Below are positions 2,127 to 63,925 of a stretch of DNA of 64,000 bases, piece after piece (positions within the stretch are counted from its first letter, which is position 1; every line of letters starts with the position of its first letter). Under the pieces are notes generated by a model, which made no database searches, was not told the origin of the DNA, and saw only the letters and a list, made by a program, of their open reading frames with translations. The translations under genes were made by a program, and so were the position numbers. This stretch comes from Octopus bimaculoides (lineage: Eukaryota), in assembly GCF_001194135.2 (NCBI RefSeq), contig NC_068988.1, positions 79,076,567 through 79,140,566 of the forward strand, read 5' to 3'.

Positions 2127-2290
2127 AGGAATGGCTGTGTGGTAAGTAGCTTGCTTACTAACCACATGGTTCCGGGTTTAGTCCCACTGCGTGACACCTT
2201 GGGCAGCTGTCTTCTACTATAGCCTCGGTCCGACCAAAGCCTTCTGGGATGATTTGGAAGATTGAAACTGAAAGAAGCCCGTCGTATATA
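2127..2290 (+). mobile_element. SINE family A (tRNA-derived head plus CORE-like segment), 5' part
   Basis: A-box TGGCTGTGTGG, B-box-like GGTTTAGTCCC, then CCTTGGGCAG..CTTCTACTATAGCC and an internal (TA)/(TG) tract. Matches the copies at 30436, 35860, 59625 and 63335. Confidence 0.85.
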
Positions 2291-3014: not shown

Positions 3015-3195
3015 TTTTCCCGAGCCAAGATTTGTAAGTCTTCTTTTTTACTCGGACGGCATTTTTAACTTCCGAGTTAAAACGGGGGTTATTTTGTCAC
3101 GAGATTCCACAACGAACCTCTTTCGCCCACAGTATTGTTCTTCAAAGAATAAGCTGCCCAACAAAGCAGTCTCCATTCTGTTTCGACATCCTCAG
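3015..3195 (-). mobile_element. RTE-clade LINE fragment (EN-RT linker)
   Basis: Minus strand reads EDVETEW...CGRKRF...NSEVKNAVRVKKKTYKSWLG across frameshifts, resembling the RTE linker region. Confidence 0.6.
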
Positions 3196-3196
3196 T

Positions 3197-3620
3197 TTGT
3201 ATAGGAAGGTCTCACACCTATTCTAACCTTTGGTTATGAATATTGGATAACAAGTGAAGATGCACGATCGTGGATTAAAGCGACAGAAATGAAATTTCTC
3301 TAAGAGATCTCCGGAGAAACGACAAAGTTTGTAACTCGGTTACAAGTGAATCTCTCCAGGTCGAGCCGCTACTTCGCTTTAAGAGGACACAGCTTCGGTA
3401 GTACGGACATGTAATTAGAATGTCACAAGAAAGAATCGCAAGAAGGAAGGAATCTTCGAAGCAATTCAACTGACCACAGATCTAAGGGTTGACCAAGAAC
3501 AAGATGGTTGGATAATATACATAGTCTTAGTAAGTCACGCATATGAATCCATCCAGAAAATCTAAAGACAGTTTTTTTTTAGATAGGACCCTATGGAAAA
3601 AGTGCCTAAGGACTCTATCC
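3197..3620 (+). mobile_element. RTE-clade LINE C-terminal fragment
   Basis: LY..LTPILTFGYEYWI...IKATEMKFL...YGHVIRMSQERIARR...RSKG*PRTRWLDNI, a typical RTE post-RT region. Confidence 0.75.
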
Positions 3621-20897: not shown

Positions 20898-21115
20898 TGT
20901 TACCTCAGCATTAGCGAAGGAGGAGGTATTGTTTTACGTCGTGTTTGTTTGTCCGTAGACAAGATACCTCAAGAACTGCTGAATGGATTCTTATGAAACT
21001 TTCAGGGATGTTTGGCCTCGTGAGTGGCACGAACTGATTAGATTTTGGGATCGAATCGGTACCGGACAAGGATTTTAGATTATTTTTTTAATATTTTCTT
21101 TACATGTATATGTAA
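20898..21115 (+). mobile_element. Non-autonomous Helentron/DINE-1-like element (5' part)
   Basis: TTACCTC...GAGGTA short subterminal inverted repeat, a GTTT/GTCC tract, then CTCAAGAACTGCTGAATGGATT..ATGAAACTT. This layout is typical of HINE/DINE-like elements. Confidence 0.5.
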
Positions 21116-22210: not shown

Positions 22211-24760
22211 ATCAAGTAGTCTAATTTTTTTATCTCGTACTTTCACTGCACTACTAAGCACTGCTCAGTGTGCCCTGGGTAAGTGCTGTGGTTTGTTGTG
22301 GTGCTCATATTTTCACTATATTGAAAGTGTTTTACGTACGATGTGTGTGGTGCCTAGTGGTGCTATTTTCTGTATCTTATATATACTTGTAAATCCTGGT
22401 GTTTTTGTTATGTATTTATCTGAATGTTTTTTTTTTAATACCTAATGGGGAAACTATAATACTAATTGTTTCTGTTTTTAGGCTCCACTTTCCAGTCACC
22501 TCTATTTCCAGATCTCTGTATTTTGAAAGTTTCCCTGTTTCTTTTGGAGAAATATTGTCATCTGTTCGAACTGATACATCGATTAGAAAGTATTTTTTCC
22601 TTAGTGATCTCTAAAATCTATATCCTACTTATTAGTCTTAACTTCTCTATCTGTGTGTATTGGCATATCCCAGAGTATGGTTGCTTTCTCAATTTCTGTG
22701 ACCTTTTCCGTCGTGTGCCTATACCATCTTTTTCTGATGTTATTCCATAGTGTTGGCATAGCTTCAAGTGTATATAAGTCCCAACTCTGTCGTGTCTGTA
22801 AATATATTCCTCCTTAACCGGTTTGGGCGGTCAGAGACAATATGATTTATTGCTTCTTCTCCATCACCACATATTCTGCAGTTACTTGTATTTCTTTTTT
22901 TGGTGATGTCTGGTGGGAAAGCTTTGATCACGAAGGGGCTTTTCTTGCTATCGTTTTATCATGATCCGTTGCTGTTCCAGTTTTAGTTTGGATTTCAGTT
23001 GTTTTACAACTTCTGTTGTTTCTTCTTTGTTTTTTTTTTTCATTGTTGTTAGTTACTATGACTTCTTTTTTGTATTTGTCATCTTCTTTAAAGATTAAAA
23101 ACAGTTTTTGTTTTATTTGTGTTTTATGGCTATTTATATTAGTTTTCTTTGCTTCTACTGTAAGCTTTTCTGTAGTCCTATGGTGGTTACTTTGTAATAG
23201 TTTTCTAGCTGTTTAAGGTCCCTATCACCTTCGATACGTTGTATATATAACCTTTCTATGTCAGATTTTGGGTGACCTAAATCCGGTCATTATTTTTCTT
23301 GTTTTCCTGTCTATTTTGTAGCTGTAACTTATAACTGGGACGGCTAGAGTGTTAACTATTAACTTGTTTTTCCGAATTGAGTTCTGTATTAATCTAACTC
23401 GTCTATAGCATTCTTTTCTTATCTTCTATTTCATTTGTGTGTGTTGTATTGTATCTAGTTCATTGATTCCTAAGTATTTGTATGTCTGGTTTGGTCTAAA
23501 TCTCTTATTTCATTTGCTTTCTCTAGTGTGATGTTGCTACTTTTAATTGGTCTTCTTCGTTTCAAGGCTACTATGGCACATTTTTCTAAGCTAAATTTTA
23601 TGTTTATTTCTTTGGTAAATCCATGTACTGCCTGTAGTGATGTTTCTAGCTGTTTATCATTTGTAGCGTACAGTTTTAGATCATCCATATAGAAAAGGTA
23701 GCTGATTGTTTTGCCGTAGCAGTTATATCCACATCCAGTTCTGTTTAGCATGTCAGATAAAGGTGTCAGTGCCAAACAGAAAAGGAGTGGAGAGAGCATG
23801 ACTCTCTGGAATATTCTTCTTCTAATGGTGGTGGCTTTGGTTTTTATGAGTCCCTCTTTTGTCTGGAGCTGTAGCACTGTCTGCCATTTATTCATGGAAT
23901 GTTTTATATACTTTATGATTATTGGTGCTACCCTGTTCATTGCTAGTGATTCTAGGATCCATGTGTGGGGAATACTATCAAAATCATTTCGGTAATCGAT
24001 CCAAGCCCTACATAGCTACAGTAACTGATCTTTACAGCCGTATGAGCCCTTGCAGCAACATTTCTGCTCTTTTGAAAACAGGTTGTTTTCTTTCATATGT
24101 TTGCACATTCTCTGCGATATTATTGCAGTAAAAGCTTTATAAATGGTAGAGAGACAAGTTTTGCGGGTTTACCGTTTCAGTGGATTAGTTTTCCCTTCCG
24201 TGAGCCATTCAGGCATTGTTTCCAACTCTTCTAGTATTTCATTAACTTTCTCATCCAGATTTTTTATGTGTTCCTGTTAGGTATTTTAACCAGAAGTTGG
24301 GGATCTTGTCGAGCCCGGGTGCCTTCCAGTTGCTTAGTTTTTGCAGTGTCTGGATAACCTCTTCAGCTGTTATAGGGTTCCAGAGTTGTTAATGTACTGT
24401 GTTCGTTGTTTTGATAGATCTTTTCTAAAGTTGTTCCTGTGCCGACCATATTTCTTCCCAAAATTCTTCCTCTTCTTCTGCTGTTAGTGCTGCATTGCTC
24501 TCTAATTTATTTTTGCCAAGTTCTCGGTAGAATCTTTTGGGGTTGGAGTTGAACTGTTTGTTTTGTTCAAAGAAACGTTGGCGTTTCTCATACCGGCAGT
24601 TTGTTTGTGCGTTGGCGAGGATATCTTGCTTTAGCTGTTCTTTTACCTCAGATATACCTTGTTCTGTAATTTTGTATTTACGTAGTATTTTTCTTCTTTT
24701 ATTGTTGCTTTATAGTGTTGATTGTCTACCAATTTCATTGAAAATTAGGAGATCCTTGTC
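22211..24760 (-). mobile_element. R4/Dong-clade LINE (RT plus REL endonuclease), decayed, with its 3' end
   Basis: QNKQFNSNPKRFYREL (N-term); LSPLLFCLALTPLS and FYMDDLKLYA (RT, ORF 23470-23940); YRHDRVG (RHD); ILWDMPIHTD...LIDVSV...KYRDLEIE (REL); QKIAPLGTTHIVRKTL (C-term). Confidence 0.88.
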
Positions 24761-27971: not shown

Positions 27972-30435
27972 CATACATACTTACAAACCTTGAAAAGGAA
28001 ATTTTTCGATCCCGTCGTATTTGTGACTTGAAATAGAAAGCCAGCGTTACAAGAAAAATGCAACATAACGATGGAATATTCATCGATACAATAATTAACA
28101 GACTAAAATATGTAGTGACGTCAATATGATTGATTGAAACGTTTGAAGTCAGGCCCCTGCAAAGTTGAAGTGCAATGTTTGAAACCTGAAACAGAAAAGA
28201 CAATCGATTTAGCACCTAACTAGAACATTGGAAAAACTAGGCGCTGAGTGCATGTTCCACTGGAATTTTGTTTATAACTTTAAATCACCCTGAATATGAG
28301 ATAGTGTCTCTGGCATGTCAAACGTATTAACGTTGTTCGAGTATGTGGAAATTAATTATGAAAAAAAAAAGAAAAAAGAGATACATCTTCGATTCGATAA
28401 AAAAGCAGATATTAAACCATTACGAATAGAATCATTCGTTGATTACGTATGAATTCAACATTCTTATTTAACTGGCATTTACTTTTAAAGAGGGGCAAAC
28501 GAACAGCGATAACACATTCAGTTGAATCGATAACTCATGAAACATCAATACTGTTCATATATTCCCTTTTCTCTCAGTTTTAGAAATATTTCCGTTAATC
28601 GCATAACTCTTCATTGATAATGGGTCTCTAATCCGTAGGATCCAAGTTTCTATTTCTGAGTAGCAGTCGCTTCAGATTATTCATAATGCAGGCGATCTCA
28701 CAGACTTTAATCATACTAATTGACAGGGAATGATGGAAAATACTGCCCTATCTTCATTGATGCTATTTACATGTGTCTTTTCTTTTCACATCGTCCATTA
28801 TAAAGTTGGCGTTGTCATTGTAATCCTTCTGAAATTGTCTTTTATTTCTTGATCCTTCCATATTCCTTTTGTATGAGTGCTTAGTCTATCCTCTAGATCT
28901 TTATGTACATCTATTTAATAAAACAGCAGAAGTTCCATACGTGATGATACTTATTTGATAAAGCTCATAAATGAAGTAGGTTAACATTATTTTTGCTGAA
29001 TATCCCTTTTGTGATTGCACCTAATACAATCAGCTCTTTGAAAATGACCGAATCTTACTACAATTATTAATGACAATAATGAAATATTCTCCCACCCCAC
29101 CTCTTAACTACTTGATTAGATGTATTTCTGAACATGCAAAGAATTCGTCTCATAATAAATAATCACAAAGTAAGTTGTTAATCTACACAGTATTTTTGAC
29201 TCCGGCCTCAAGATTTGTTTCCGTAAACTTCCTTTAATCGCTATTCCAATCAGCTTTCCATTATACTATTACGGATACACGTACATGTACATTACAGTGT
29301 TGAAATTCATCACTTTCGACCTTTTCAGCTGACATCTTGTATCGTCATTTTCTTTTGTCAAGGAAACGATAATCAACAGACAACTCTTTCAGATCTAGTT
29401 CAAAATATAGTTCATCGCTAAGCAACCATTACTATCGTGTCTGCGGGAATAGATATTCAACGGATGTCACCTTCGGTTCTTCCCCTTTCCAATCCACAAA
29501 CATTTTCACTTAGATGAGTATTCCTTTTTCTTCGGTTAAATTCAACGTGAAAAGGAAAAAATAAACAGCTAACTTTTCAATATTGTATTGCTACAGAGTC
29601 TTTTCTTCGCCTTTTGACTTGCCTAATTCCTTAGCAACAAAATAATAATAAAATATACCGCAGTTGTCTGCATATAGCCATATTTATTTTTAATACCTTT
29701 TATCCATTTTTACGAGATAGTTAAAATAATACTTAAAGTAGGTAGCATCCAACTTCCAGTCAACAATATTAAGAGAAATATAATTTAGTGTTTGTAAATA
29801 CACGTTAAACCCCGCCCACGAAGACTTCAAAGCTATACTATGCACATAAACATATTCATGGGGAAATTACATAGCTGTTATAGAAGTTTACTACTAATTT
29901 TATTTTAATATTTCTTGTGAGTTTGGCTCTCAACATCGGAACCGAGTTATATCCCATATAACTTAAGTTGTTGCTAATGCATTGAATAAATTACACACAA
30001 AAGAAAAAAAACTCTTAATGAATTAAAATATGCTTCTTCGGTGGAGAAAATAAACAAAGTTCACAAGCAGTAATTTATGGTGAGACAGTAATGATACAAT
30101 CATAAGAAATTAAGAATTAATTTCACAGAAAGTTCAATTGATGAGCTTGGAGAGAGAGCGAATCTTTGATAGCAGACAAGGTGACAGCTATGGACATCTT
30201 TTGATCTTATTAGACCTCGTAAAGGAAACATAATCCTCGCAAGCTTTTGTTCTTTAGTGAACAAAGGAAATCTGTTACAAACAATTTTGGCCGATCAAAT
30301 GTGCATAATTATAACGGCGAGTAAGAAACATAACAGTTACTAGTTACAACCTGCTACATATTGATTCCACTCCTCAGTATAAGCAGTAATTAGACTAATA
30401 GAGTAAGGGATACGTATATACATATATACTCTTTT

Positions 30436-30657
30436 TTCTTTACTTGTTTCAGTCATTTGACTGCGGCCATGCTGGAGCACCGCCTTTAGTCGAGCAAATC
30501 GACCCCAGGACTTATACTTTGTAAGCCTAGTACTTATTCTATCGGTCTCTTTTGCCGAACCGCTAAGTTACGGGGACGTAAACACACCAGCATCGGTTGT
30601 CAAGCGAAGTTGGGGGGGACAAACACAGACACACAAACATATGCACACACACACACG

Positions 30658-30714
<57 letters not shown>

Positions 30715-30876
30715 GACGGGCTTCTTTCAGTTTCCGTCTACCAAATCCACTCACAAGGCTTTGGTCGGCCCGAGGCTATAGTAGAAGACACTTGCCCAAG
30801 GTGCCACGCAGTGGGACTGAACCCAGAACCATGTGGTTGATAAGCAAGCTACTTACCACACAGCCACTCCTGCGCA
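30436..30876 (-). mobile_element. SINE family A, full-length
   Basis: tRNA head at 30876, CORE-like CCTTGGGCAAGTGTCTTC, internal (TA)(TG) tract, 3' body ...GGCGGTGCTCCAGCATGGCCGCAGTCAAATGACTGAAACAAGTAAAG. Confidence 0.92.
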
Positions 30877-31033
30877 TATAATATGCACATATAATATGTG
30901 TTAGAACGATCCTATGTTAACAGACCACTAGAGAGTAACGAGATTTGAGAAAAATTCAAGATGGCTTCGGAAGAATAGGCCTCCATTGATCAGATCAGGC
31001 CACGGAAGCGGCGTAATTTTTCTTATATTTCAG

Positions 31034-35306: not shown

Positions 35307-35337
<31 letters not shown>

Positions 35338-35859
35338 NNNNNNNNNNNNNNNNNNNNNNNNNNNNNNNNNNNNNNNNNNNNNNNNNNNNNNNNNNNNNNN
35401 NNNNNNNNNNNNNNNNNNNNNNNNNNNNNNNNNNNNNNNNNNNNNNNNNNNNNNNNNNNNNNNNNNNNNNNNNNNNNNNNNNNNNNNNNNNNNNNNNNNN
35501 NNNNNNNNNNNNNNNNNNNNNNNNNNNNNNNNNNNNNNNNNNNNNNNNNNNNNNNNNNNNNNNNNNNNNNNNNNNNNNNNNNNNNNNNNNNNNNNNNNNN
35601 NNNNNNNNNNNNNNNNNNNNNNNNNNNNNNNNNNNNNNNNNNNNNNNNNNNNNNNNNNNNNNNNNNNNNNNNNNNNNNNNNNNNNNNNNNNNNNNNNNNN
35701 NNNNNNNNNNNNNNNNNNNNNNNNNNNNNNNNNNNNNNNNNNNNNNNNNNNNNNNNNNNNNNNNNNNNNNNNNNNNNNNNNNNNNNNNNNNNNNNNNNNN
35801 NNNNNNNNNNNNNNNNNNNNNNNNNNNNNNNNNNNNNNNNNNNNNNNNNNNNNNNNNNN
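35338..35859. other. Assembly gap (others: 2384-2509, 16530-16539, 21179-21488, 27776-27890, 41499-41929, 42895-43063, 51952-52316, 59911-60514, 62595-62843)
   Basis: N runs, nearly all bordered by microsatellites. Confidence 0.99.
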
Positions 35860-36080
35860 AAACACAGACACACAAATATATACACACACATACATATACA
35901 TATATATACATATATACGACGGGCTTCTTTCAGTTTCCGTCTACCAAATCCGCTCACAAGGCTTTGGTCGGTCCGAGGCTATAGTAGAAGACACTTGCCC
36001 AAGGTGCCACGCAGTGGGACTGAACCCAGAACCATGTGGTTGGTAAGCAAGCTACTTACCACACAGCCACTCCTACGCCT
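35860..36080 (-). mobile_element. SINE family A (3' part lost in gap)
   Basis: Near-identical to 30610-30876. Confidence 0.92.
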
Positions 36081-36110
36081 AAAATTCGTTTAAGATATTT
36101 TTTCAAAATC

Positions 36111-36165
36111 TTCTTAACTGAAGAGGCAACGAAAACTGCCAAAACTGACGCATCAGTATCAAGAA
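36111..36165 (+). ncRNA. Type I hammerhead ribozyme motif, copy 1 (G12 to A variant)
   Basis: Stem I TTCTTAA/TCAAGAA; core CTGAAGA (36118-24); stem II GGCA/TGCC; AAAA in place of GAAA; stem III ACTGA-cgca-TCAGT; cleavage triplet GTA (36156-58). Confidence 0.8.
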
Positions 36166-36464
36166 TTCTCGATCGGTACTTTTCGGACGACTTTAGTCCC
36201 TGTTAGTGTATATGTTTTCATTCATGTGCATTAATTACAACACTATAGCGGTTTAGCTCTTATTTCTAGAAATGTAGGTGTTTCCTCACACCCTAGTCTC
36301 CTTTAGTGAGATTCGTAATTATCCTTTTTGATGAAACATTGCAAACTGCTGTTTATATTAATTTTACATATACACATTAGCGAATCGCTGAATCATTCAA
36401 TTATTTGAATGACGGAAGCATAAATACTAATGGTCAATTGAGTCCGGAAAGTGCCGAACAATCG
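36111..36464 (+). mobile_element. Hammerhead-containing repeat unit (retrozyme-like monomer of ~358 nt when joined to 41288-41298)
   Basis: 36111-36297 aligns to 41292-41475 at roughly 80% identity by eye. The intervening 36298-36464 joins to 41288 via the duplicated GCCGAACAATCG. Confidence 0.65.
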
Positions 36465-39400
36465 CCTAGTCGAGCCTTTTTTCTGCTATCCGTTATTGTT
36501 GAGTGAGTTCGTTTTTGTTCGTTTAACGTTATTTTGTGTATGCTACTTGGATTTGAACTGTTGTCTTTTTTTACAGTAATTTTCGCCATACGGGGCTGAA
36601 AATTTCTGTCCCTTTTATTTTTTTTCTCTTTTATATTTTACTTGTTTCAGTCATTTGACTGCGGCCATGCTGGAGCACCGCATTTAATCGAGCAATTCGA
36701 CTTCAGGACTTATTCTTTGGAAGCCTAGTACTTATTTCTATCGGTATTTTTTGCCGAACCGCTAAGTCACGGGAGCGTAAACACACCACCACCGGTTGTC
36801 AAGCGATGTTGGGAGGACAAACACAGACAAACAAACATACACACACACATACATATATGTATACAGGTGGTGAGCTGGCAGAAACGTTAGTACGCCGGGC
36901 GAAATGCTTACCAAGTCCACTCACAAGGCTTTGGTCGGCCCGAGGCTATAGTAGAAGACACTTGCCCAAGGTGCCACGCAGTGGGAATGAACACGGAACC
37001 ATGTTGTTGGTAAGCAAGCTACTTACCACATAGCCACTCCTGCGCCTATGGACTTTTTGATACCTTTGTGGTAACTTTTGAAATTTTTTTGAAAATTTTT
37101 CTTGTCGTCTTCGACAAGTTGTTATGAGATTTGTCTTAGCGTCAAGAAAATACTTTCCCGTGATGGGAAAAGGTAGTAACGAGGAAACTGAAGGCGTAAA
37201 GGAAAAACAATCGTTTTCAGACGCAGTGGGCAGTACCGTCACAGAGTTAGAGGTGCAACAGGACCAGCTGCTTAAGGTCCGGGAGTTAATTAAGTAAAGT
37301 GGCAATGAAATTAAACTGGTGCCACCACAAGAAAAGATTCAGGAATGATATGCTAAAACAGTAGTGTACAAGGTGTATAACCTAAAAGAATAGAAAATTA
37401 TGGACATGGAAAACGAAATAGTTGAGAAATGTTTGTCAAATTCGCTACGTCAGTCGAGGTGCCAGGAGCGCAACTATCGAAGCTCAATTTGACTCGGCTG
37501 ACGTAGCGAAAGTGATATCTACGCAAATGCTAAAACATAATGAAATTATGCTGCTATCCACTTACTTGGGAAGAAGGACAGCTAAAGTGAACATGGAGGA
37601 TATCCTAAGAGATTACGATGTAATGTGGGTAGCAGCAGCAGTGTTGTATGACGTCGAACAAAAGATCTCAATGCTGCAGATGAAAAAAGAAAGAGGCCGT
37701 TAATTGGATGGGCCAAACCCTCGAGTTGCTAGTACAGGCCGAAAATAATGTACTAGAAAATTTGCCAGATAGGGTGTTTATTGAAGAGGGGCTATCCATG
37801 CGGATAGCAGTGGAGGGACGTAGGCCCAGGTGTTTTAAATGCGGTGAAATGGGTAACGTTCGCTCCAACTGTGTTTAAAAAAAGAAGGCTAGCGAAGCCC
37901 CTCCTCAGAGCACAGAGAAAGAGAAGGTGAAAACAAGCACAACAATAGCAGCAAAAGAAAAAAAGGAAACCGGGAACTAAAATGATGACAACGCACAGGA
38001 AGAAATGGAATTTACACATGTGATATACAAAAGAAAGAAAGCAGATACCCTGGACTTGCCACCCCAAACAAAAAAATTAAACACAGAAGACACACAACAG
38101 AAAGAATTTCCCAGTCCTGTCCCTCAGGCACTGTGTTCGTAGGAACACAGTTCGCCCAACCCCTCCCCACAAAACAAGACAAAAATTTTTTTATTAAAAA
38201 TTTGAAAAGAAGGATTAAAAAGTTTATAGATACGTTAACCATTCAAAAATTAAACTGTTCAGAAAAACAATACACAAAGTCGGACGTTAGATTTGCAAAG
38301 GTAAATGAGGAGTGGAAGGAGAAAATCCTTCAAGAACATTTAAAAAATAATTTGATAAAAGACGTTACGATGGAAGTGATGAAGGGAAAACTAATAATAA
38401 CCCCGGCAGCCACACCTACCCAGAGCCCGGTGGCAACGCCGGTAAAAAGTCCTGCAGCTTCGGTAACAGAGGGGTAAGACGGAGAAGCAGGCAGACACAC
38501 ACTGCAATGCTCCCTACCCCTTTCTATCAATGATTAAGTTGGGCTGTGTGAATGTGCGTGGAATGGGGTCAAAATGGAAACAAATTTGTTTCCTGCATGA
38601 CCTCACGACATACGGAGTGGATGTGGCTATTGTAACTGAGTCTAAGATGAGCGGGGCCCAAGCGTTGTCGCCCCTTCTTATCATGAAGACCTTGGACTTG
38701 CACTGAACCCAGAAGGTAGGCTGGTCGTTCTGGATGTGACTCCCGTAAATAAACAGTCCTTCAGGTTGGTACCTGTCACAGCTCTGAACAAGGATGGGCA
38801 GTCGGGTTTTTTTCGAGACCTAGAGCACGTTGTAGTGACGTCAAAAACGATAGTTTTAGTAGAGGACTCGATGCGCGGGTGTTGGCTCAACTAATAGGAA
38901 AGGGAATCCTAGCCTCAAGGGTCAACTAGAGAGCTTTAATCTAGTAGACCGTTACCGACTGGATGAGCCGAACGTTCCACAGTAGACGTGGAGTAACAAC
39001 GATGGCTCAAACAGGTCGTACATAGATAGGGTATTCTTTAGGAAAAGAGATAAGGAAACGTTTAGTTGTTCACGGTTTCACATTTTTCCTCTACGCAGAT
39101 AACAAATTTGTGATGTGTGAGGTTCAATCAGATAAGTGTCATAGACAGGGACCCAGGTACTGGAAGATGAACAAGTCTATTTTGACTTCAGAAGCCTTCC
39201 GTACCCGGACATTATGTGGTACCATCATTAACAACAGATGGTGGCACGCCCTCAAAAGAGCCATCCGTTCGGAGTCCATTAGACTTAGCAATCAGCTAAG
39301 TTTAGATAGAACTGGATTAGATGGCGATTTAGTTGAGAATTTAGACGAGATAATGGAATCTGGCTCTGCATCCGGAGTGCTGGCGGTGAGAATGGTCTTG

Positions 39401-41275
39401 TACCGTCACCTCAACTCCAAGCACGAAGGTTGCAGAGTTAGAGCTAAGTTACGTGCAAGGAAACGAGAGGGCATTAACGTTGCCGGATGGGCACGTCGTG
39501 CAGAGAGTCAGAGAGGTAAAAACGCCTCTATAAAGTTTTTAACGGACGAGCAGGGGCGCAAGATCTATGGACAGGAGGAGATGCAAAAAGTCTTCCATCA
39601 GCATTTCACTCGCTTGTTTGGAGGAAGCGGTTCGACAGACAGAGCGAGGGAAGGCCTTAAAGGACTTCCTAGCCGATGGACCGCGGCTTTCAACACGTGA
39701 GGCGGGATGCTGTGAAGGACTGATTACTCCCGCGGAATTTAAAGAGGTGCTGGCCGAGTGCAACAGGAAGAATTTGCTGGTGTTGGATGGTCTGCCCTAT
39801 GAGTTCTATCAGTGTATGCCGGACTTGTTCGGGACGTACTGGCTAACGTCTATACAAACTGTCAACAGAAAGGGAGAATTCCCAGTTCTGTGAGCCGGGT
39901 AGTGGTGACTTTGGTCCAGAAAGACCCGAGCAAGTAATTATAGGCCCATAACTCTACTTAATGTAGAGTTAAAGATTTTGGCCGAAGTATTAGCAAAAAG
40001 GTTTACGGCTATCGTGGAGAAGCTTGTAGGGAAAGCACAGACATGTGCAAATCAGGAAGGGCGGAGGTGGTACAGGTGTTCATTGTATCTGTAATCACTT
40101 ACCGCCTGACAGTTGTCCCTAACCCCGATTCATGGCTAAACAAGTTGGAACGACTTCTTTTCTGCTTTTTGTGGAAAAGAGGAAAGCCACTTGTGAGGCG
40201 CTCTATCTGCTGCCAGGAACCGTTAAAGGGTGAGTTAGGAATGCTTTGGCTAATGATGCGCAGGCATGCGTTAAGGCTGAGACATCCCTGGCGCCACCTG
40301 GAGGGTGATAAGATGTGGAGTCCCTGGAAGAGGAATTCTTCCCGTGACCGGCCTCTATGAAGAGATTCAAACCCGGTTTCATTAAAAGACGTAACCTGAC
40401 CTTATGACAAAAGGAGTGCCGACAGGCACACACGCTGATCCACTAGACGGGCAAGGCCGGCAGCGGGAATACCACCTCGGTATTCTATAGAGGGCTGGTA
40501 GAGGCTAAAAATGATGACGACCTAGGAGGGGCTCTGGGGTTCGATGAGAACCAGCTTACCAACCTGTTTGAAAATACTTTCAGGCTGGGGTATTTGGATA
40601 ATTACCAAAACTTCCTGAACTGGCAGTGTTATAGGAATGCTCTACCTGTTCGCGATAAGTTATCAAGGCACGGAATATCAGTGTCACCGATATGTCCAAA
40701 ATGCGGGCTGGACAACGAGACCGTTCAGCACGCTTTTGTACATTTTCGGGAGCTGTCAGGCTTGATAAGTTACGTACAACACGTGTTGTCGCATCTGGGA
40801 CGAGTACAGTTGTTGGTTGGATCTATGATTAAGATGGTATCGCCGGGTAGATCTATGATTAAGATGGTATCACCAACTGGACTCTCGATAGGGAGGAATC
40901 GTGACAGGGTCCTTCGTCTCCGGCTCCGGATTGCTGACCTACTTCAGATACCAGGACTCTGCCGCGGAGCGTGTATGAGAAAAGATGGAAGGGAAGTGAT
41001 GAAAAAAGTGGGTGTCAGGAACCCAGCTTGATTATTGATGGAGGAAGAATGGATAGCTGTGGGGCCTTACAGGTTGCCGGGTAGGTAGATAGAACTTGGA
41101 TTTAATCGATTGTTTAATTGATTCATTTTATAACATAAGGAATATCCAAAGTTATCGAATTATTTAAAATCTTGAAATTTTTAGACGAACTCATTTGACA
41201 TTTTGGGTGTAATGTTGTGTCCTGCATTGTCCTATTCCATGTATGATTTTTATAATCTTAATAAAAAATTCAAGA
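36465..41275 (+). mobile_element. Near full-length Tx1/L1-clade LINE, decayed and internally deleted, with 12-bp TSD
   Basis: ORF1 from ATG 37163 (SFSDAV; RPRCFKCGEMGNVRSNC knuckle). ORF2 from ATG 38530: CVNVRG, SYIDRV, GPRYWKMN, LDGLPYEFY, YRPITLLNVELKIL, CPKCGLDNETVQH. AATAAA at 41260. TSD GCCGAACAATCG at 36453-64 and 41276-87. RT catalytic core is absent. Confidence 0.9.
36636..37048 (-). mobile_element. SINE family A inserted in the LINE 5'UTR, carrying a ~45-bp family B head in the opposite orientation
   Basis: Family A 3' body 36636-36865; GGTGGTGAGCTGGCAGAAACGTTAGTACGCCGGGCGAAATGCTTA at 36866-36910; family A head 36911-37048. Confidence 0.88.
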
Positions 41276-41292
41276 GCCGAACAATCGAGCAG

Positions 41293-41345
41293 TCTTAATG
41301 GAAGAGGCTACGGAAATTGCCGAAACTGACGCGTCAGTATTAAGA
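41293..41345 (+). ncRNA. Type I hammerhead ribozyme motif, copy 2 (C3U4 to UG variant)
   Basis: Stem I TCTTAA/TTAAGA; TGGAAGA (41299-305); stem II GGC/GCC; GAAA; stem III ACTGA-cgcg-TCAGT; triplet GTA (41337-39). Confidence 0.8.
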
Positions 41346-41929
41346 ATTCTCGCTCGGCATTTTTCGGACGATTATGATTCCTATTAGTGTATATTTCCAT
41401 TCATGTGCATTAACTACAGCATTAGAGGAGTTTAGCTCTTATTCTAATAATGTGGGTGTTTCCTATCACCCTAGTTATATATATATATATATATATATNN
41501 NNNNNNNNNNNNNNNNNNNNNNNNNNNNNNNNNNNNNNNNNNNNNNNNNNNNNNNNNNNNNNNNNNNNNNNNNNNNNNNNNNNNNNNNNNNNNNNNNNNN
41601 NNNNNNNNNNNNNNNNNNNNNNNNNNNNNNNNNNNNNNNNNNNNNNNNNNNNNNNNNNNNNNNNNNNNNNNNNNNNNNNNNNNNNNNNNNNNNNNNNNNN
41701 NNNNNNNNNNNNNNNNNNNNNNNNNNNNNNNNNNNNNNNNNNNNNNNNNNNNNNNNNNNNNNNNNNNNNNNNNNNNNNNNNNNNNNNNNNNNNNNNNNNN
41801 NNNNNNNNNNNNNNNNNNNNNNNNNNNNNNNNNNNNNNNNNNNNNNNNNNNNNNNNNNNNNNNNNNNNNNNNNNNNNNNNNNNNNNNNNNNNNNNNNNNN
41901 NNNNNNNNNNNNNNNNNNNNNNNNNNNNN

Positions 41930-41970
<41 letters not shown>

Positions 41971-42229: not shown

Positions 42230-42748
42230 ACTATCAGCCCGCTTTGTGCAGCTCCAAGTGAACAGTTGTTGTGGAAATTGGGATCTCGAGGTGGTCATTA
42301 AACTCTGCAGCAATTTTGGGAGCTGTACTTTTGTGATCCTTTCTAACAATTCACGTAAGAGTCGGATGGTCCTTATCTGAAAGCTTTGGTTTTCTTCTGG
42401 AGTTTTGTTTCGACGAGGAGGTTTTCCCCTCTTTCTCAAAGGGTGTCATTACTTTCGACACGGTACTTCTTGATACTTCAAACATTTCGGCTGTTTTCGC
42501 GATACTAGTGCCTGCCATACGAGCACCAACAATTTGACCTCTTTGAAAGTCCGATAGATCTGTCATTTTAATGAATTTTAATAACCTCTTACTGATTATA
42601 TATGAAATAGAGACAGCAATTTTAGCAAAACATATTAAGCAACACTAATAATAAATCAAAAAGCATAAAAATAAACGAGCTTTTGACGGTTTTATAGATA
42701 TTTCAAAATTATGATGCTAGGTGTTTCCATTGTTTTGTCCAACCCCTG
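42230..42748 (-). mobile_element. Tc1-like transposon, 5' TIR and transposase N-terminus
   Basis: TA followed by TIR CAGGGGTTGGACAAAACAATGGAAACAC at 42748. MTDLSDFQRGQIVGARMAGTSIAKTAEMFEVSRSTVSKVM (ORF 42351-42566) is a Tc1 HTH. Confidence 0.9.
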
Positions 42749-54720: not shown

Positions 54721-55095
54721 AAAACAATCAGTCATCTATATTTGTCATGTACTCAGTTGATAGTTCATTATTTCTACCTTAGTGTTATTGATTTCTGGCC
54801 AAAAAACTTTGAAATTGTATACCATGAGGTTGACATCTGTAACTGATAGAACATGAAGTGAAACGTCTAGTACACAGATGTTAAGATTTGCGAGTACTTA
54901 AGAGCAACAGAGGATCAGTTCATTACATATTATCGTAGGTTCTTTAGTCTTTGACTGTTGTTGTCTGATTGGCTTAATGCGAAGAAATAGTACTAAAATC
55001 AAGTTTCCTAAAATCAAGCGTCAAATACTTCTGCATCAATATAAATCTTAATCTTGTATCACAATTGGACAAATAAAACTAATTGTCACCTGGTT

Positions 55096-59624: not shown

Positions 59625-59910
59625 CTACGAAGGGGACGTAAACACACCACCATCAGTTGTCAAGTGATGTTGGGGTGACAAACACAGACACGCAAACACA
59701 TACACACACAGACATATATATATATATATATATACATATATACGACGTGCTTCTTTCAGTTTCCGTCTACCAAATCCACTCACAAGGCTTTGGTCGACCT
59801 GAGGCTATAATAGAAGACACTTGCCCAAGGTGCCACGCAGTGGGAATGAACCCGGAATCATGTGGTTGGTAAGCAAGTTACTTACCACACAGCCACTCCT
59901 GTGCCTATAT
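59625..59910 (-). mobile_element. SINE family A (partial)
   Basis: Aligns to 30570-30876. Confidence 0.9.
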
Positions 59911-62566: not shown

Positions 62567-63334
62567 ATATGCATATATATATGTATATATATATNNNNNN
62601 NNNNNNNNNNNNNNNNNNNNNNNNNNNNNNNNNNNNNNNNNNNNNNNNNNNNNNNNNNNNNNNNNNNNNNNNNNNNNNNNNNNNNNNNNNNNNNNNNNNN
62701 NNNNNNNNNNNNNNNNNNNNNNNNNNNNNNNNNNNNNNNNNNNNNNNNNNNNNNNNNNNNNNNNNNNNNNNNNNNNNNNNNNNNNNNNNNNNNNNNNNNN
62801 NNNNNNNNNNNNNNNNNNNNNNNNNNNNNNNNNNNNNNNNNNNNGTTTCAGCACACGATTTCACATCGTGAATCATGCAAACAAAAAGAAAAAATTTCTA
62901 AATGCAACAAATGCAAAATTTCAATGAAAGGATTTTTTGAAATTTAGTTTAAGCTAAGGATGTATTGCAATAGCTTAAAGAATACAAAACAAATTAAGTT
63001 TAAATATTAGTGTCGATGCGTGAAACGTTGAGACATGTCAGTAAATGGTGTTTAAACCATTTAGCATATAGTCATAGTCGGTGATATGGCTGCAGCGGAC
63101 CTTGTTCGGTATGCGACATTCATAAGTCTCAAACAATGACGAAACACCGATGTCTGTTGCTCCGAGAAAGGACTTGATGTGAATTGTATCGCTTGATTGT
63201 GACTTACTTTCAGGTGTTTTTTACACCAGGCGCATAGAGAATATATTCTCTTACGCCTAAACACCGCAGCCAATTCCCGGACTAACAACACATCTTGTGT
63301 ACGTATGTTCGATTTTGTTTGTATATATATATAT

Positions 63335-63745
63335 AGGCGCAGGAGTGGCTGTGTGGTAAGTAACCTGCTCATCAACCACATGGTTCCAGGATCAGTCCCA
63401 CTGCCTGGTCCCTGGGGCAAGTGTCTTCTACTATAGCCTCGGGCCGACCAAAGCCTTGAGTGTGGATCTGGTAGACGGAAACTGAAAGAAGCTCATCGTA
63501 TATATATTTGTGTGTGTGTGTGTGTGTATGTATATGTTTGTGTGTCTATATTTGTCTCCCCAACACTGCTTGACAACCGTTGGTGGTGTGTTTACGTCCC
63601 CATAACTTAGCGGTTCGGCAAAAGTAACCGATAGAATAATTACTAGGCTTACAAAGAATAAGTCCTGGCGTCGATTTGCTTGACTCCAGGCGGTACCCCA
63701 ACATGGCTGCAGTCAAATGACCGAAACAAGTAAAAGAATATAAGG
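63335..63745 (+). mobile_element. SINE family A, full-length
   Basis: AGGCGCAGGAGTGGCTGTGTGGTAAG head through ...CAGTCAAATGACCGAAACAAGTAAAAGAATA tail. Confidence 0.92.
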
Positions 63746-63764
63746 ATATATTTACATATACGAC

Positions 63765-63925
63765 GGGTTACTTTCAGTTTCCCTCTACTAAATCTATTCA
63801 CAGGCTTTCGTCGTCCCGAAGCTAGAGTAGAAGACACCTAACCAAGATGCCACGCAGTGCTGAACTGAAACTATGTGCTTGGGAAGCAAACTTCTTACTA
63901 CGTAATCACGCCTGCACCTACTTTT
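63765..63925 (-). mobile_element. SINE family A 5' part, diverged, tail-to-tail with the previous copy
   Basis: CGACGGGTTACTTTCAGTTTCC...GAAGACACC..CCAAGATGCCACGCAGTG. Confidence 0.8.

What the first reader, a model, noticed from the sequence alone, without database searches (positions are those of the whole stretch)
36111..41475. Two type I hammerhead ribozymes define a ~358-nt retrozyme-like tandem unit hidden by a LINE insertion
Seen: both 36111-36165 and 41293-41345 fold as stem I / CUGAnGA / stem II / GAAA / stem III / GUA / stem I, in the same orientation, within ~190-bp repeats of about 80% identity. Copy 1 has G12 to A; copy 2 has C3U4 to UG. Their consensus (TTCTTAA CTGAAGA GGCA-loop-TGCC GAAA CTGA-cgcg-TCAG TA TTAAGAA) is a complete hammerhead. 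Removing the TSD-bounded LINE puts the two cores 358 nt apart. Established: tandem type I hammerhead repeats of a few hundred nt (non-LTR retrozymes) occur in metazoans and give monomer circRNAs, and Penelope-like elements also carry hammerheads. Inference: this is a relic of an octopod retrozyme or self-cleaving repeat family, possibly undescribed, with active copies elsewhere.
Basis: partly seen in the sequence, partly recalled or inferred. Interest (0 to 1): 0.85.

Follow-up and report, generated by a model that had tools for sequence, protein, structure and literature searches.

The report
Decayed hammerhead-ribozyme tandem repeat relic
Two copies of a 358-base repeat, split apart by a later jumping-gene insertion, each carry a mutated and almost certainly dead hammerhead self-cleaving RNA motif, so this is most likely the fossil of an already known kind of small circular-RNA retroelement, not a working or new system.

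Summary
The sequence facts hold. Two same-strand repeats (36112-36297 and 41293-41475, 83% identical) each carry a type I hammerhead-shaped motif. Copy 1 has G12A. Copy 2 has C3U and U4G. A 16-23 nt duplication flanks a 4.8 kb insertion made of a decayed LINE and a nested SINE. Removing that insertion gives a 1.5-unit tandem with a 358-nt period.

Neither copy is an intact hammerhead. No Rfam hammerhead model matches, even at E<=10 on an 81-nt slice. A one-mismatch motif turns up by chance in about 6% of shuffled windows. There is no covariation, and the motif is no better conserved than the rest of the repeat.

Other features still point to real hammerhead ancestry:
- The two copies are mutated at different core positions.
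- G12A is a CpG-to-CpA change.
- Helices I and II have the canonical 6 and 4 bp.
- Helix III is palindromic.
- The period, GC content (0.37) and self-paired monomer (z -4 to -5.4) match metazoan non-LTR retrozymes.

The insertion is a LINE, not a Penelope-like element.

No other copy could be retrieved, so the existence of a family or of active members is untested. My verdict is a probable dead relic of a known element class, of modest interest.

The parts
36112..36469 (+). Repeat unit 1, one full 358-nt period
   Evidence: Homology to unit 2 starts at 36112. The period is 5181-4823 = 358. GC is 0.37. The RNA fold is -95.7 kcal/mol with z = -5.4.
36111..36165 (+). Hammerhead-like motif, copy 1. 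Helix I 36111-17 with 36159-65; core CUGAAGA 36118-24; helix II 36125-28 with 36137-40; A12-A13-A14 36141-43 (G12 changed to A); helix III 36144-48 with 36153-57; A17 at 36158
   Evidence: Read directly from the sequence. The descriptor hit has one core mismatch. There is no Rfam hammerhead hit.
36158..36159 (+). Position equivalent to the self-cleavage site (GUA, then U)
   Evidence: Inferred from the hammerhead numbering applied to the sequence. Cleavage itself was not tested.
36170..36221 (+). 5' arm of the long imperfect hairpin that continues helix I
   Evidence: nhmmer finds an inverted match to 36412-36460 (E 0.017). The two arms are paired in the minimum-free-energy and centroid folds.
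36412..36460 (+). 3' arm of the same hairpin
36449..36464 (+). Left copy of the target-site duplication, AAGTGCCGAACAATCG (similarity continues to 36471)
   Evidence: It matches 41272-41287 at 15/16 positions, and over 23 nt at 19/23 (D11).
36465..36625 (+). 5' end of the insertion, unassigned (presumed LINE 5' UTR)
   Evidence: No similarity to the repeat or to anything else in the window. The LINE assignment is an inference.
36626..37048 (+). Nested SINE-like element
   Evidence: Other copies lie at 30429-30878, 63334-63735(-), 59633-59907 and 35942-36081.
37049..41271 (+). Decayed LINE. It has a CCHC knuckle near 37800, an endonuclease-like start near 38560 and RT N-terminal pieces at 39690-40030. 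The RT core is missing. The RT thumb lies at 40043-40360 and the zf-RVT domain at 40594-41031.
   Evidence: Frame translations. PF13966 zf-RVT, E 3.5e-8. LINE-1 ORF2p match, E 1e-5. No GIY-YIG-like motif.
41272..41287 (+). Right copy of the target-site duplication, AAGAGCCGAACAATCG (similarity continues to 41294)
   Evidence: D11.
41292..41346 (+). Hammerhead-like motif, copy 2. The core reads UGGAAGA at 41299-41305 (C3 changed to U, U4 changed to G). G12 is intact at 41322. Helix III 41325-41338 is a perfect palindrome. There is a U-U mismatch in helix II.
   Evidence: Read directly from the sequence. The descriptor hit has two core mismatches. There is no Rfam hit.
41293..41475 (+). Repeat unit 2, partial (183 nt), cut off at a (TA)n microsatellite
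   Evidence: 83% identical to 36112-36297.
41476..41498 (.). (TA)n microsatellite abutting the 3' end of the array, followed by the assembly gap 41499-41929

Best explanation
This is a dead, 1.5-unit tandem insertion of a small non-coding retroelement that carried one type I hammerhead ribozyme per 358-nt unit. That makes it a non-LTR retrozyme-like element, a class related to the terminal repeats of Penelope-like elements.

Inferred life cycle, taken from the known class:
1. Tandem units are transcribed as an oligomeric RNA.
2. Each hammerhead cuts after A17 (GUA, then U), releasing 358-nt monomers.
3. A host RNA ligase circularises the monomer. The rest of the monomer forms a long imperfect hairpin that continues helix I.
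4. A reverse transcriptase supplied by an autonomous element copies the circle more than once around and integrates it, here ending at a (TA)n microsatellite.

What the sequence shows at this locus:
- The two units have since drifted to 83% identity.
- Copy 1 lost the general base G12, by a CpG-to-CpA change.
- Copy 2 lost C3 and U4, and one helix II pair.
- A LINE, itself later hit by a SINE, inserted 5 nt before the unit boundary and duplicated 16 nt of target.

Neither motif should cleave today.
For: - The motif geometry is correct, with 12 of 13 and 11 of 13 core positions intact.
- One-mismatch hits are expected at 0.059 per window, and none of 1000 shuffles gave a perfect hit.
- The two copies are damaged at different core positions, so every core position is canonical in at least one copy.
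- Both CpG-context differences, at G12 and in loop 3, read CpA in copy 1 and CpG in copy 2. This is the expected direction of decay (sequence).
- The 23 nt directly upstream of copy 2 recur 337 nt into unit 1. This circular permutation implies a tandem or circular template (D11).
- The 358-nt period and GC of 0.37 fit the published class: 150-450 bp units with GC below 45%, and 350-390 bp in mussel (PMC7229834).
- Helix I is 6 bp, helix II is 4 bp and helix III is palindromic, as described for canonical metazoan type I hammerheads (PMC4209133).
- The monomer RNA is unusually self-paired. Its z-score is -5.4, or -4.0 in my own run, where 2 of 80 background windows reach -4 or below. An internal inverted repeat underlies this.
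- The unit has no coding capacity or protein relatives.
- Penelope-like elements are an annotated TE order in Octopus vulgaris (PMC13282606). This is relevant if the window is octopod.
Against: - No Rfam hammerhead family matches either copy, even at E<=10 on 81-501 nt slices.
- Neither copy has an intact core.
- With only two sequences there is no covariation: 0 compensatory changes and 3 disruptive ones.
- The motif is no better conserved than the rest of the repeat, 84% against 82%.
- Minimum-free-energy folds prefer alternative pairings.
- A one-mismatch motif alone is expected by chance in about 6% of windows.
- Part of the monomer's stability is strand-symmetric; the reverse strand has z = -2.9.
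- There are only 1.5 units and no other copy in 64 kb.
- No relative was retrievable elsewhere.
- The LINE target lies within 2-7 nt of the point equivalent to the array's 5' end, a coincidence of roughly 2-4%. That leaves room for two separate insertions instead of one split array.
Confidence: 0.65

Rival explanations
1. The hammerhead resemblance is chance, inside an ordinary old duplicated or tandem repeat (a fragment of some unrelated, uncharacterised repeat). No ribozyme was ever encoded here.
For: - One-mismatch motifs occur at 0.059 per shuffled window and two-mismatch motifs at 0.63.
- Three unrelated two-mismatch hits sit in this very window.
- Rfam sees nothing.
- There is no covariation and no extra conservation.
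- The complete 'consensus' is a best-of-two pick.
- About 2.5% of background windows fold as stably as the unit.
Against: - The chance that a one-mismatch motif falls inside one particular 360-nt repeat is about 3.5e-4 (derived).
- The second copy restores exactly G12, and at a CpG site.
- The period, GC content, canonical helix lengths, palindromic helix III, circular permutation and self-paired monomer all independently match the known class (PMC7229834; PMC4209133).
Confidence: 0.2
2. The repeat is a stranded terminal piece (a pseudo-LTR or tail, in partial tandem) of an autonomous Penelope-like element, not a separate non-autonomous retrozyme family.
For: - Penelope-like elements carry type I hammerheads in their terminal repeats and insert as partial tandems, often at microsatellites such as (TA)n (PMC4209133; PMC8557442). 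Unit 2 ends exactly at (TA)n.
- A 2026 preprint finds that vertebrate retrozymes are close relatives of these terminal repeats (10.64898/2026.07.22.740005).
- Penelope-like elements are annotated in Octopus vulgaris.
Against: - No Penelope-type ORF is attached or anywhere in the window. There is no GIY-YIG-like motif, and the only RTs are LINE-type.
- The hammerheads of these elements are described as minimal, with helix III absent or 1-2 bp and helix II long (7-8 bp in Schistosoma, 6 bp in D. virilis). Here helix III is 5 bp and helix II is 4 bp.
- The full 358-nt period is self-contained and self-paired.
Confidence: 0.15
3. The two repeats are the terminal direct repeats (LTR-like) of the 4.8 kb RT-encoding element that lies between them.
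For: Two same-strand repeats of about 185 nt flank an RT-bearing element about 5 kb long.
Against: - The element is a LINE: it has zf-RVT, LINE-1 ORF2p-like RT pieces and an A-rich 3' end. LINEs have no terminal repeats.
- The LINE is bounded by its own 16-nt duplication, which lies inside the repeat unit (D11).
- The shared segments are circularly permuted (R...A on the left, A'R' on the right), not collinear as LTRs would be.
Confidence: 0.03

Closest known systems
Metazoan non-LTR retrozymes (Cervera and de la Pena 2020, PMC7229834), especially the Mytilus galloprovincialis repeats of about 350-390 bp
   Same: - Short head-to-tail units (358 nt) with low GC (0.37).
- No coding capacity.
- One type I hammerhead-shaped motif per unit.
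- Highly self-paired monomer RNA, with helices II and III of the hammerhead-like motif forming as free hairpins outside the long hairpin in the predicted fold.
- The host phylum is Mollusca, if the window is cephalopod.
   Different: - Only 1.5 units are present, and both motifs carry inactivating core changes.
- Helix III is 5 bp and fully palindromic, where 1-2 bp is described as usual.
- A multi-copy family, circular RNA and self-cleavage are all unshown.
- No sequence similarity to published retrozymes could be tested.
Hammerhead motifs in the pseudo-LTRs of Penelope-like elements (Cervera and de la Pena 2014, PMC4209133; Craig et al. 2021, PMC8557442)
   Same: - Type I topology.
- Partial-tandem insertion architecture.
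- Abuts a (TA)n microsatellite.
- Likely shares the same reverse-transcription machinery.
   Different: - No RT plus GIY-YIG ORF is attached.
- The motif is not of the 'minimal' kind: helix III is 5 bp, helix II is 4 bp and helix I is 6 bp.
Classical type I hammerhead satellite repeats (newt satellite 2, Schistosoma Sm-alpha), Rfam Hammerhead_1 RF00163
   Same: - Core order of helix I, CUGANGA, helix II, GAAA, helix III, UH, helix I.
- G10.1-C11.1 and A15.1-U16.1 pairs.
- Units of a few hundred nt arranged in tandem.
- A palindromic helix III that could also pair between neighbouring units.
   Different: - It does not score against any Rfam hammerhead model, even at E<=10.
- The core is broken in both copies.
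- Loop 1 to loop 2 tertiary contacts were not evaluated.

Membership tests
Hammerhead ribozyme, type I | Invariant core: C3 U4 G5 A6 N7 G8 A9, G12 A13 A14, A15.1-U16.1, H17 | tested here: not met
   Copy 1 has A at position 12 (36141). Copy 2 has U3 and G4 (41299-41300). Only a best-of-two pick between the copies is complete.
Hammerhead ribozyme, type I | Three helices around the core, with a G10.1-C11.1 pair and helix I open-ended | tested here: met
   29 of 32 pair cells are standard, against 21-50% when the partners are slid. Helix I is 6-7 bp, helix II is 3-4 bp and helix III is 5 bp.
Hammerhead ribozyme, type I | Scores against a curated covariance model (Rfam Hammerhead_1, HH9, HH10 and clan) | tested here: not met
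   There are no matches at gathering score in the window. No hammerhead family is listed at E<=10 on slices of 501, 351 and 81 nt.
Hammerhead ribozyme, type I | Covariation supporting helices I-III | tested here: inconclusive
   Only two sequences are available. They show 0 compensatory changes and 3 disruptive single changes.
Hammerhead ribozyme, type I | Site-specific self-cleavage in Mg2+ | not testable with these tools
   This needs in vitro transcription. G12 is the general base (PMC6155905), so copy 1 as it stands is expected to be inactive.
Non-LTR retrozyme | Head-to-tail repeats with monomers of about 150-450 bp | tested here: met
   The period is 358 nt once the duplication-bounded insertion is removed, but there are only 1.5 units (D4 and D11).
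Non-LTR retrozyme | One functional type I hammerhead per monomer | tested here: inconclusive
   There is one hammerhead-shaped motif per unit at the same offset, but both have broken cores.
Non-LTR retrozyme | Low GC (below 45%) and no coding capacity | tested here: met
   GC is 0.37. The longest ORF is 56 aa and runs in from the SINE. A six-frame peptide search found nothing. Eleven of 30 codons differ between the copies in the one shared open frame.
Non-LTR retrozyme | Highly self-paired monomer RNA | tested here: met
   The fold is -95.7 kcal/mol against -68.9 +/- 4.9 for shuffles, z = -5.4. Two of 80 background windows are as extreme. An internal inverted repeat is present.
Non-LTR retrozyme | Multi-copy dispersed family, expressed as circular RNA | not testable with these tools
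   There is no other copy in the 64 kb window. No cephalopod genome or transcriptome can be searched by DNA here. The metagenome scans were empty.
Penelope-like element pseudo-LTR | Flanks or adjoins an ORF with RT and a GIY-YIG endonuclease | tested here: not met
   The intervening ORFs are LINE-type. There is no GIY-YIG-like motif in any frame of the window.
Penelope-like element pseudo-LTR | Minimal hammerhead: helix III absent or 1-2 bp, long helix II (7-8 bp in Schistosoma, 6 bp in D. virilis) | tested here: not met
   Helix III is 5 bp with a tetraloop and helix II is 4 bp. The description of the minimal form comes from PMC4209133.

The most novel reading that the evidence does not exclude
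The relic marks an undescribed cephalopod family of non-LTR retrozymes. Its hammerhead has an unusually stable, fully palindromic 5-bp helix III. Intact members elsewhere in the genome are still transcribed and processed into circular RNAs of about 358 nt.
Probability: 0.3. Interest if true: 0.5.

Novelty: new member of a known kind. Interest (0 to 1): 0.3.

Why it matters
If the family is real and has intact members, it would extend hammerhead-bearing circular-RNA retroelements to cephalopods. No paper in the searchable library reports them there. It would also add a variant with a long palindromic helix III, which should cleave as a monomer. The locus itself is inert: both cores are broken, and it evolves at the same rate as the rest of the repeat. 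Its value is as a probe sequence for a genome-wide search, not as a functional element.

Tried and rejected
- **Rfam.** I ran the whole window at gathering score and three slices at E<=10. No hammerhead family was listed.
- **Outside copies through proteins.** I searched all six reading frames of both units as one query against 5.8 billion proteins, hoping for ORF fragments from cephalopod assemblies. Nothing scored E<=10. The frames lack start codons, so this route is probably blind.
- **Outside copies through the LINE.** I searched the neighbouring LINE ORF to reach orthologous loci. Nothing scored.
- **Exact look-up.** An exact look-up of a window ORF found nothing on record.
- **Metagenome scans.** Two DNA pattern scans, one for the hammerhead core and one for the conserved non-ribozyme segment, gave 0 hits.
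- **Coding exon hypothesis.** The open frame across the motif (LTEEAT...TDASV...) shows 11 of 30 residues changed between the copies and has no homologues. I rejected it.
- **LTR or pseudo-LTR of the intervening element.** I rejected this because the element is a LINE with its own target duplication, and the shared segments are circularly permuted.
- **Thermodynamic folding as a test of the hammerhead.** This was uninformative, because alternative hairpins compete.
- **Similarity between the 5' and 3' ends of the insertion.** Only the 16-nt duplication was found.
Full report
**1. The observation**

I read both stretches directly.

- Copy 1 (36111-36165) is TTCTTAA CTGAAGA GGCA-acgaaaac-TGCC AAAA CTGA-cgca-TCAG T A TCAAGAA.
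- Copy 2 (41292-41346) is GTCTTAA TGGAAGA GGCT-acggaaat-TGCC GAAA CTGA-cgcg-TCAG T A TTAAGAA.

In hammerhead numbering, copy 1 is canonical at every core position except A for G at position 12 (36141). Copy 2 is canonical except U for C at position 3 and G for U at position 4 (41299-41300).

The G10.1-C11.1 and A15.1-U16.1 pairs are present, and A17 is a permitted H. Helix I is the open helix, so the topology is type I.

On a two-row alignment with the hammerhead structure, 29 of 32 pair cells are standard pairs. Only 21-50% are when the 3' partners are slid by 1-3 columns.

The motifs lie at the same offset in two direct repeats, 36112-36297 and 41293-41475. These are 83% identical and are the only copies in the window by BLASTN and nhmmer.

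**2. Is it more than chance?**

I wrote a deliberately loose type I descriptor:
- helix I of 6 bp with at most 1 mismatch;
- helix II of at least 3 bp;
- helix III of at least 3 bp including A15.1-U16.1;
- 13 scored core positions.

In the real window it returns copy 1 at one mismatch, copy 2 at two, and three unrelated two-mismatch hits.

In 1000 dinucleotide-preserving shuffles there were no perfect hits and 59 one-mismatch hits, or 0.059 per window. Two-mismatch hits average 0.63 per window.

The motif alone is therefore only suggestive. In a genome of gigabase size there would be thousands of such chance hits.

What lifts it above chance is the context. The probability that a one-mismatch hit falls inside one given 360-nt repeat is about 3.5e-4. 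The second copy also restores exactly the base the first has lost.

**3. Anatomy of the locus**

The 23 nt directly upstream of copy 2 (41272-41294, AAGAGCCGAACAATCGAGCAGTC) recur at 36449-36471 (AAGTGCCGAACAATCGCCTAGTC). That position is 337 nt into unit 1 (D11). It is also the best local alignment between the two flanks.

The shared segments are therefore circularly permuted: repeat then box on the left, box then repeat on the right. That is the signature of a tandem or circular template. The spacings, 5181 minus 4823, give a period of 358 nt.

Between the two boxes lie three segments:
- 161 unassigned nt (36465-36625);
- a SINE-like element (36626-37048) with several other copies in the window;
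- a decayed plus-strand LINE (37049-41271).

The LINE shows a CCHC knuckle, an endonuclease-like N-terminus, RT N-terminal pieces and the RT thumb, and its RT core is missing. It also has a zf-RVT domain (PF13966, E 3.5e-8). Its RT piece matches human LINE-1 ORF2p at E 1e-5.

No GIY-YIG-like motif occurs in any frame of the window. The intervening element is therefore not a Penelope-like element, and the two repeats are not its terminal repeats.

Unit 2 stops at 41475 against a (TA)n run and an assembly gap. The element is 358 + 183 nt, or 1.5 units.

One caveat remains. With a 16-nt duplication, the LINE target lies 5 nt before the point in the period at which the array begins. That is a coincidence of a few percent. 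A less parsimonious alternative is two separate insertions, a precise monomer plus a partial copy. Even then, the partial copy contains the unit junction, so the template was still multimeric or circular.

**4. Features of the unit beyond the motif**

- GC is 0.37.
- There is no ORF of note. The one frame open across the motif in both copies differs at 11 of 30 residues and has no homologues, so it is not coding.
- The 358-nt RNA folds at -95.7 kcal/mol against -68.9 +/- 4.9 for shuffles, z = -5.4. In my own run z was -4.0, and 2 of 80 random 358-nt windows reached -4 or below. The reverse strand gave -2.9.
- The stability comes from a long imperfect hairpin. Positions 36170-36221, just 3' of the motif, pair with 36412-36460, which includes the duplicated box.
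- This hairpin continues helix I, while helices II and III form as free hairpins.

**5. State of the ribozymes**

G12 is the general base of the reaction (PMC6155905), and copy 1 has lost it. Copy 2 has lost C3 and U4 and carries a U-U mismatch in helix II. From established mutational knowledge of the hammerhead core, neither should cleave.

The motif is 84% identical between copies and the rest of the repeat is 82%. The three differences inside helices all break pairs, and none is compensatory. The locus has therefore drifted neutrally since duplication.

Both differences in CpG context, at G12 and at the last base of loop 3, read CpA in copy 1 and CpG in copy 2. This favours G12 as ancestral. 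That is an inference from the usual direction of CpG decay.

The best-of-two sequence passes as a complete hammerhead, and its hammerhead fold is within 0.7 kcal/mol of the optimum. It is a pick between two sequences, not a consensus.

**6. The Rfam test**

There are no matches at gathering score in the window. No hammerhead family is listed at E<=10 in slices of 501, 351 or 81 nt.

The broken cores, the 14-nt helix III and the 8-nt loop 2 may explain part of this. As tested, this membership criterion is not met.

**7. Comparison with what is known**

Metazoan non-LTR retrozymes are tandem units of 150-450 bp. They have GC below 45% and one type I hammerhead per unit. They are expressed as highly self-paired circular RNAs of about 170-400 nt, and the mussel units are about 350-390 bp (PMC7229834).

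Canonical metazoan type I hammerheads have a 6-bp helix I, a 4-bp helix II and a short helix III with a palindromic loop. The motifs of Penelope-like elements are 'minimal', with little or no helix III and a long helix II (PMC4209133).

The present motif has the 6-bp and 4-bp helices. Its whole helix III is a 14-nt palindrome in copy 2. Helix III is 5 bp, longer than described as usual. It resembles the retrozyme kind more than the Penelope kind.

A 2026 preprint argues that animal retrozymes derive from Penelope terminal repeats, that 75% of families reach at most seven units, and that monomers and dimers are common (10.64898/2026.07.22.740005). The line between the two is therefore thin.

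Penelope-like elements are an annotated TE order in Octopus vulgaris (PMC13282606), so a reverse transcriptase of the right kind would be available if the window is octopod. I could not verify the species.

The JC distance between the two units is 0.195, or roughly 0.1 per copy. On that paper's scale, where a copy-to-consensus distance of 0.09 corresponds to about 25 My, the duplication is some tens of millions of years old. This is a rough inference that assumes the same rate.

**8. What could not be done**

No cephalopod DNA can be searched with these tools.
- Six-frame peptides of the unit found nothing among 5.8 billion proteins.
- The LINE ORF found nothing.
- An exact ORF look-up found nothing.
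- Two metagenome pattern scans found nothing.
- No paper in the library mentions hammerheads or retrozymes in cephalopods.

Whether a family exists, whether its consensus core is intact, and whether anything is expressed all remain open.

**9. Verdict**

The most likely reading (0.65) is a dead 1.5-unit array of a retrozyme-like, hammerhead-bearing non-autonomous retroelement, later split by a LINE and a SINE.

The rivals are:
- a chance motif in an ordinary repeat (0.2);
- a stranded Penelope terminal piece (0.15);
- terminal repeats of the intervening element (0.03).

The element belongs to a known class. At most it is a new member in a lineage where the class has not been reported. Interest is 0.3.

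Noticed in passing
window 30429-30878 (+), 36626-37048 (+), 63334-63735 (-), 59633-59907 (+), 35942-36081 (+), 2127-2257 (-), 63786-63920 (+): A SINE-like element of about 420-460 nt with an internal (CA/TA)n microsatellite occurs at least seven times in the window at 77-94% identity. One copy is nested in the LINE that splits the repeat, and another ends 31 nt upstream of unit 1.
   Followed up: partly
window 23470-24015 (-): A second, unrelated reverse-transcriptase fragment with an intact FYMDD motif (Pfam RVT_1, E 1.4e-15). It is another LINE-type relic.
   Followed up: partly
window 42354-42644 (-): A Tc1/mariner-like transposase N-terminal helix-turn-helix fragment (HTH_28 and HTH_SB hits). 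It lies about 880 nt downstream of unit 2, beyond the gap.
   Followed up: partly
window 40815-40874: A 30-nt tandem duplication at 90% identity inside the LINE 3' ORF, which repeats the peptide SMIKMVSPG.
   Followed up: no
window 20970-21014 (+), 54985-55030 (-), 3160-3201 (-): Three other hammerhead-shaped hits, each with two core mismatches and minimal helices, and none inside a repeat. About 0.6 are expected in shuffles, so real sequence gives somewhat more. I treat them as chance.
   Followed up: partly
window 35309-35337 and 41476-41498 / 41930-41970: The assembly gaps on both sides of the locus (35338-35859 and 41499-41929) are bordered by (TA)n runs. The array's 3' end abuts (TA)n directly. 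(TA)n is a reported target preference of some Penelope-like elements, but I did not test whether that is meaningful here.
   Followed up: no
window 36288-36297 and 41466-41475: Both units carry CACCCTAGT about 175-185 nt into the unit, and unit 2 ends exactly there. The CCCTAG part is one base away from the reverse complement of the TTAGGG telomeric repeat, a feature linked to hammerheads in endonuclease-lacking Penelope-like elements. A single near-copy could easily be chance.
   Followed up: no
window 36545-36564 / 41094-41113 and 37073-37088 / 41167-41182: Two short, roughly collinear matches (16-20 nt, 80-88% identity) between the 5' and 3' regions of the LINE insertion. They are not significant in a local alignment against shuffles.
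   Followed up: partly
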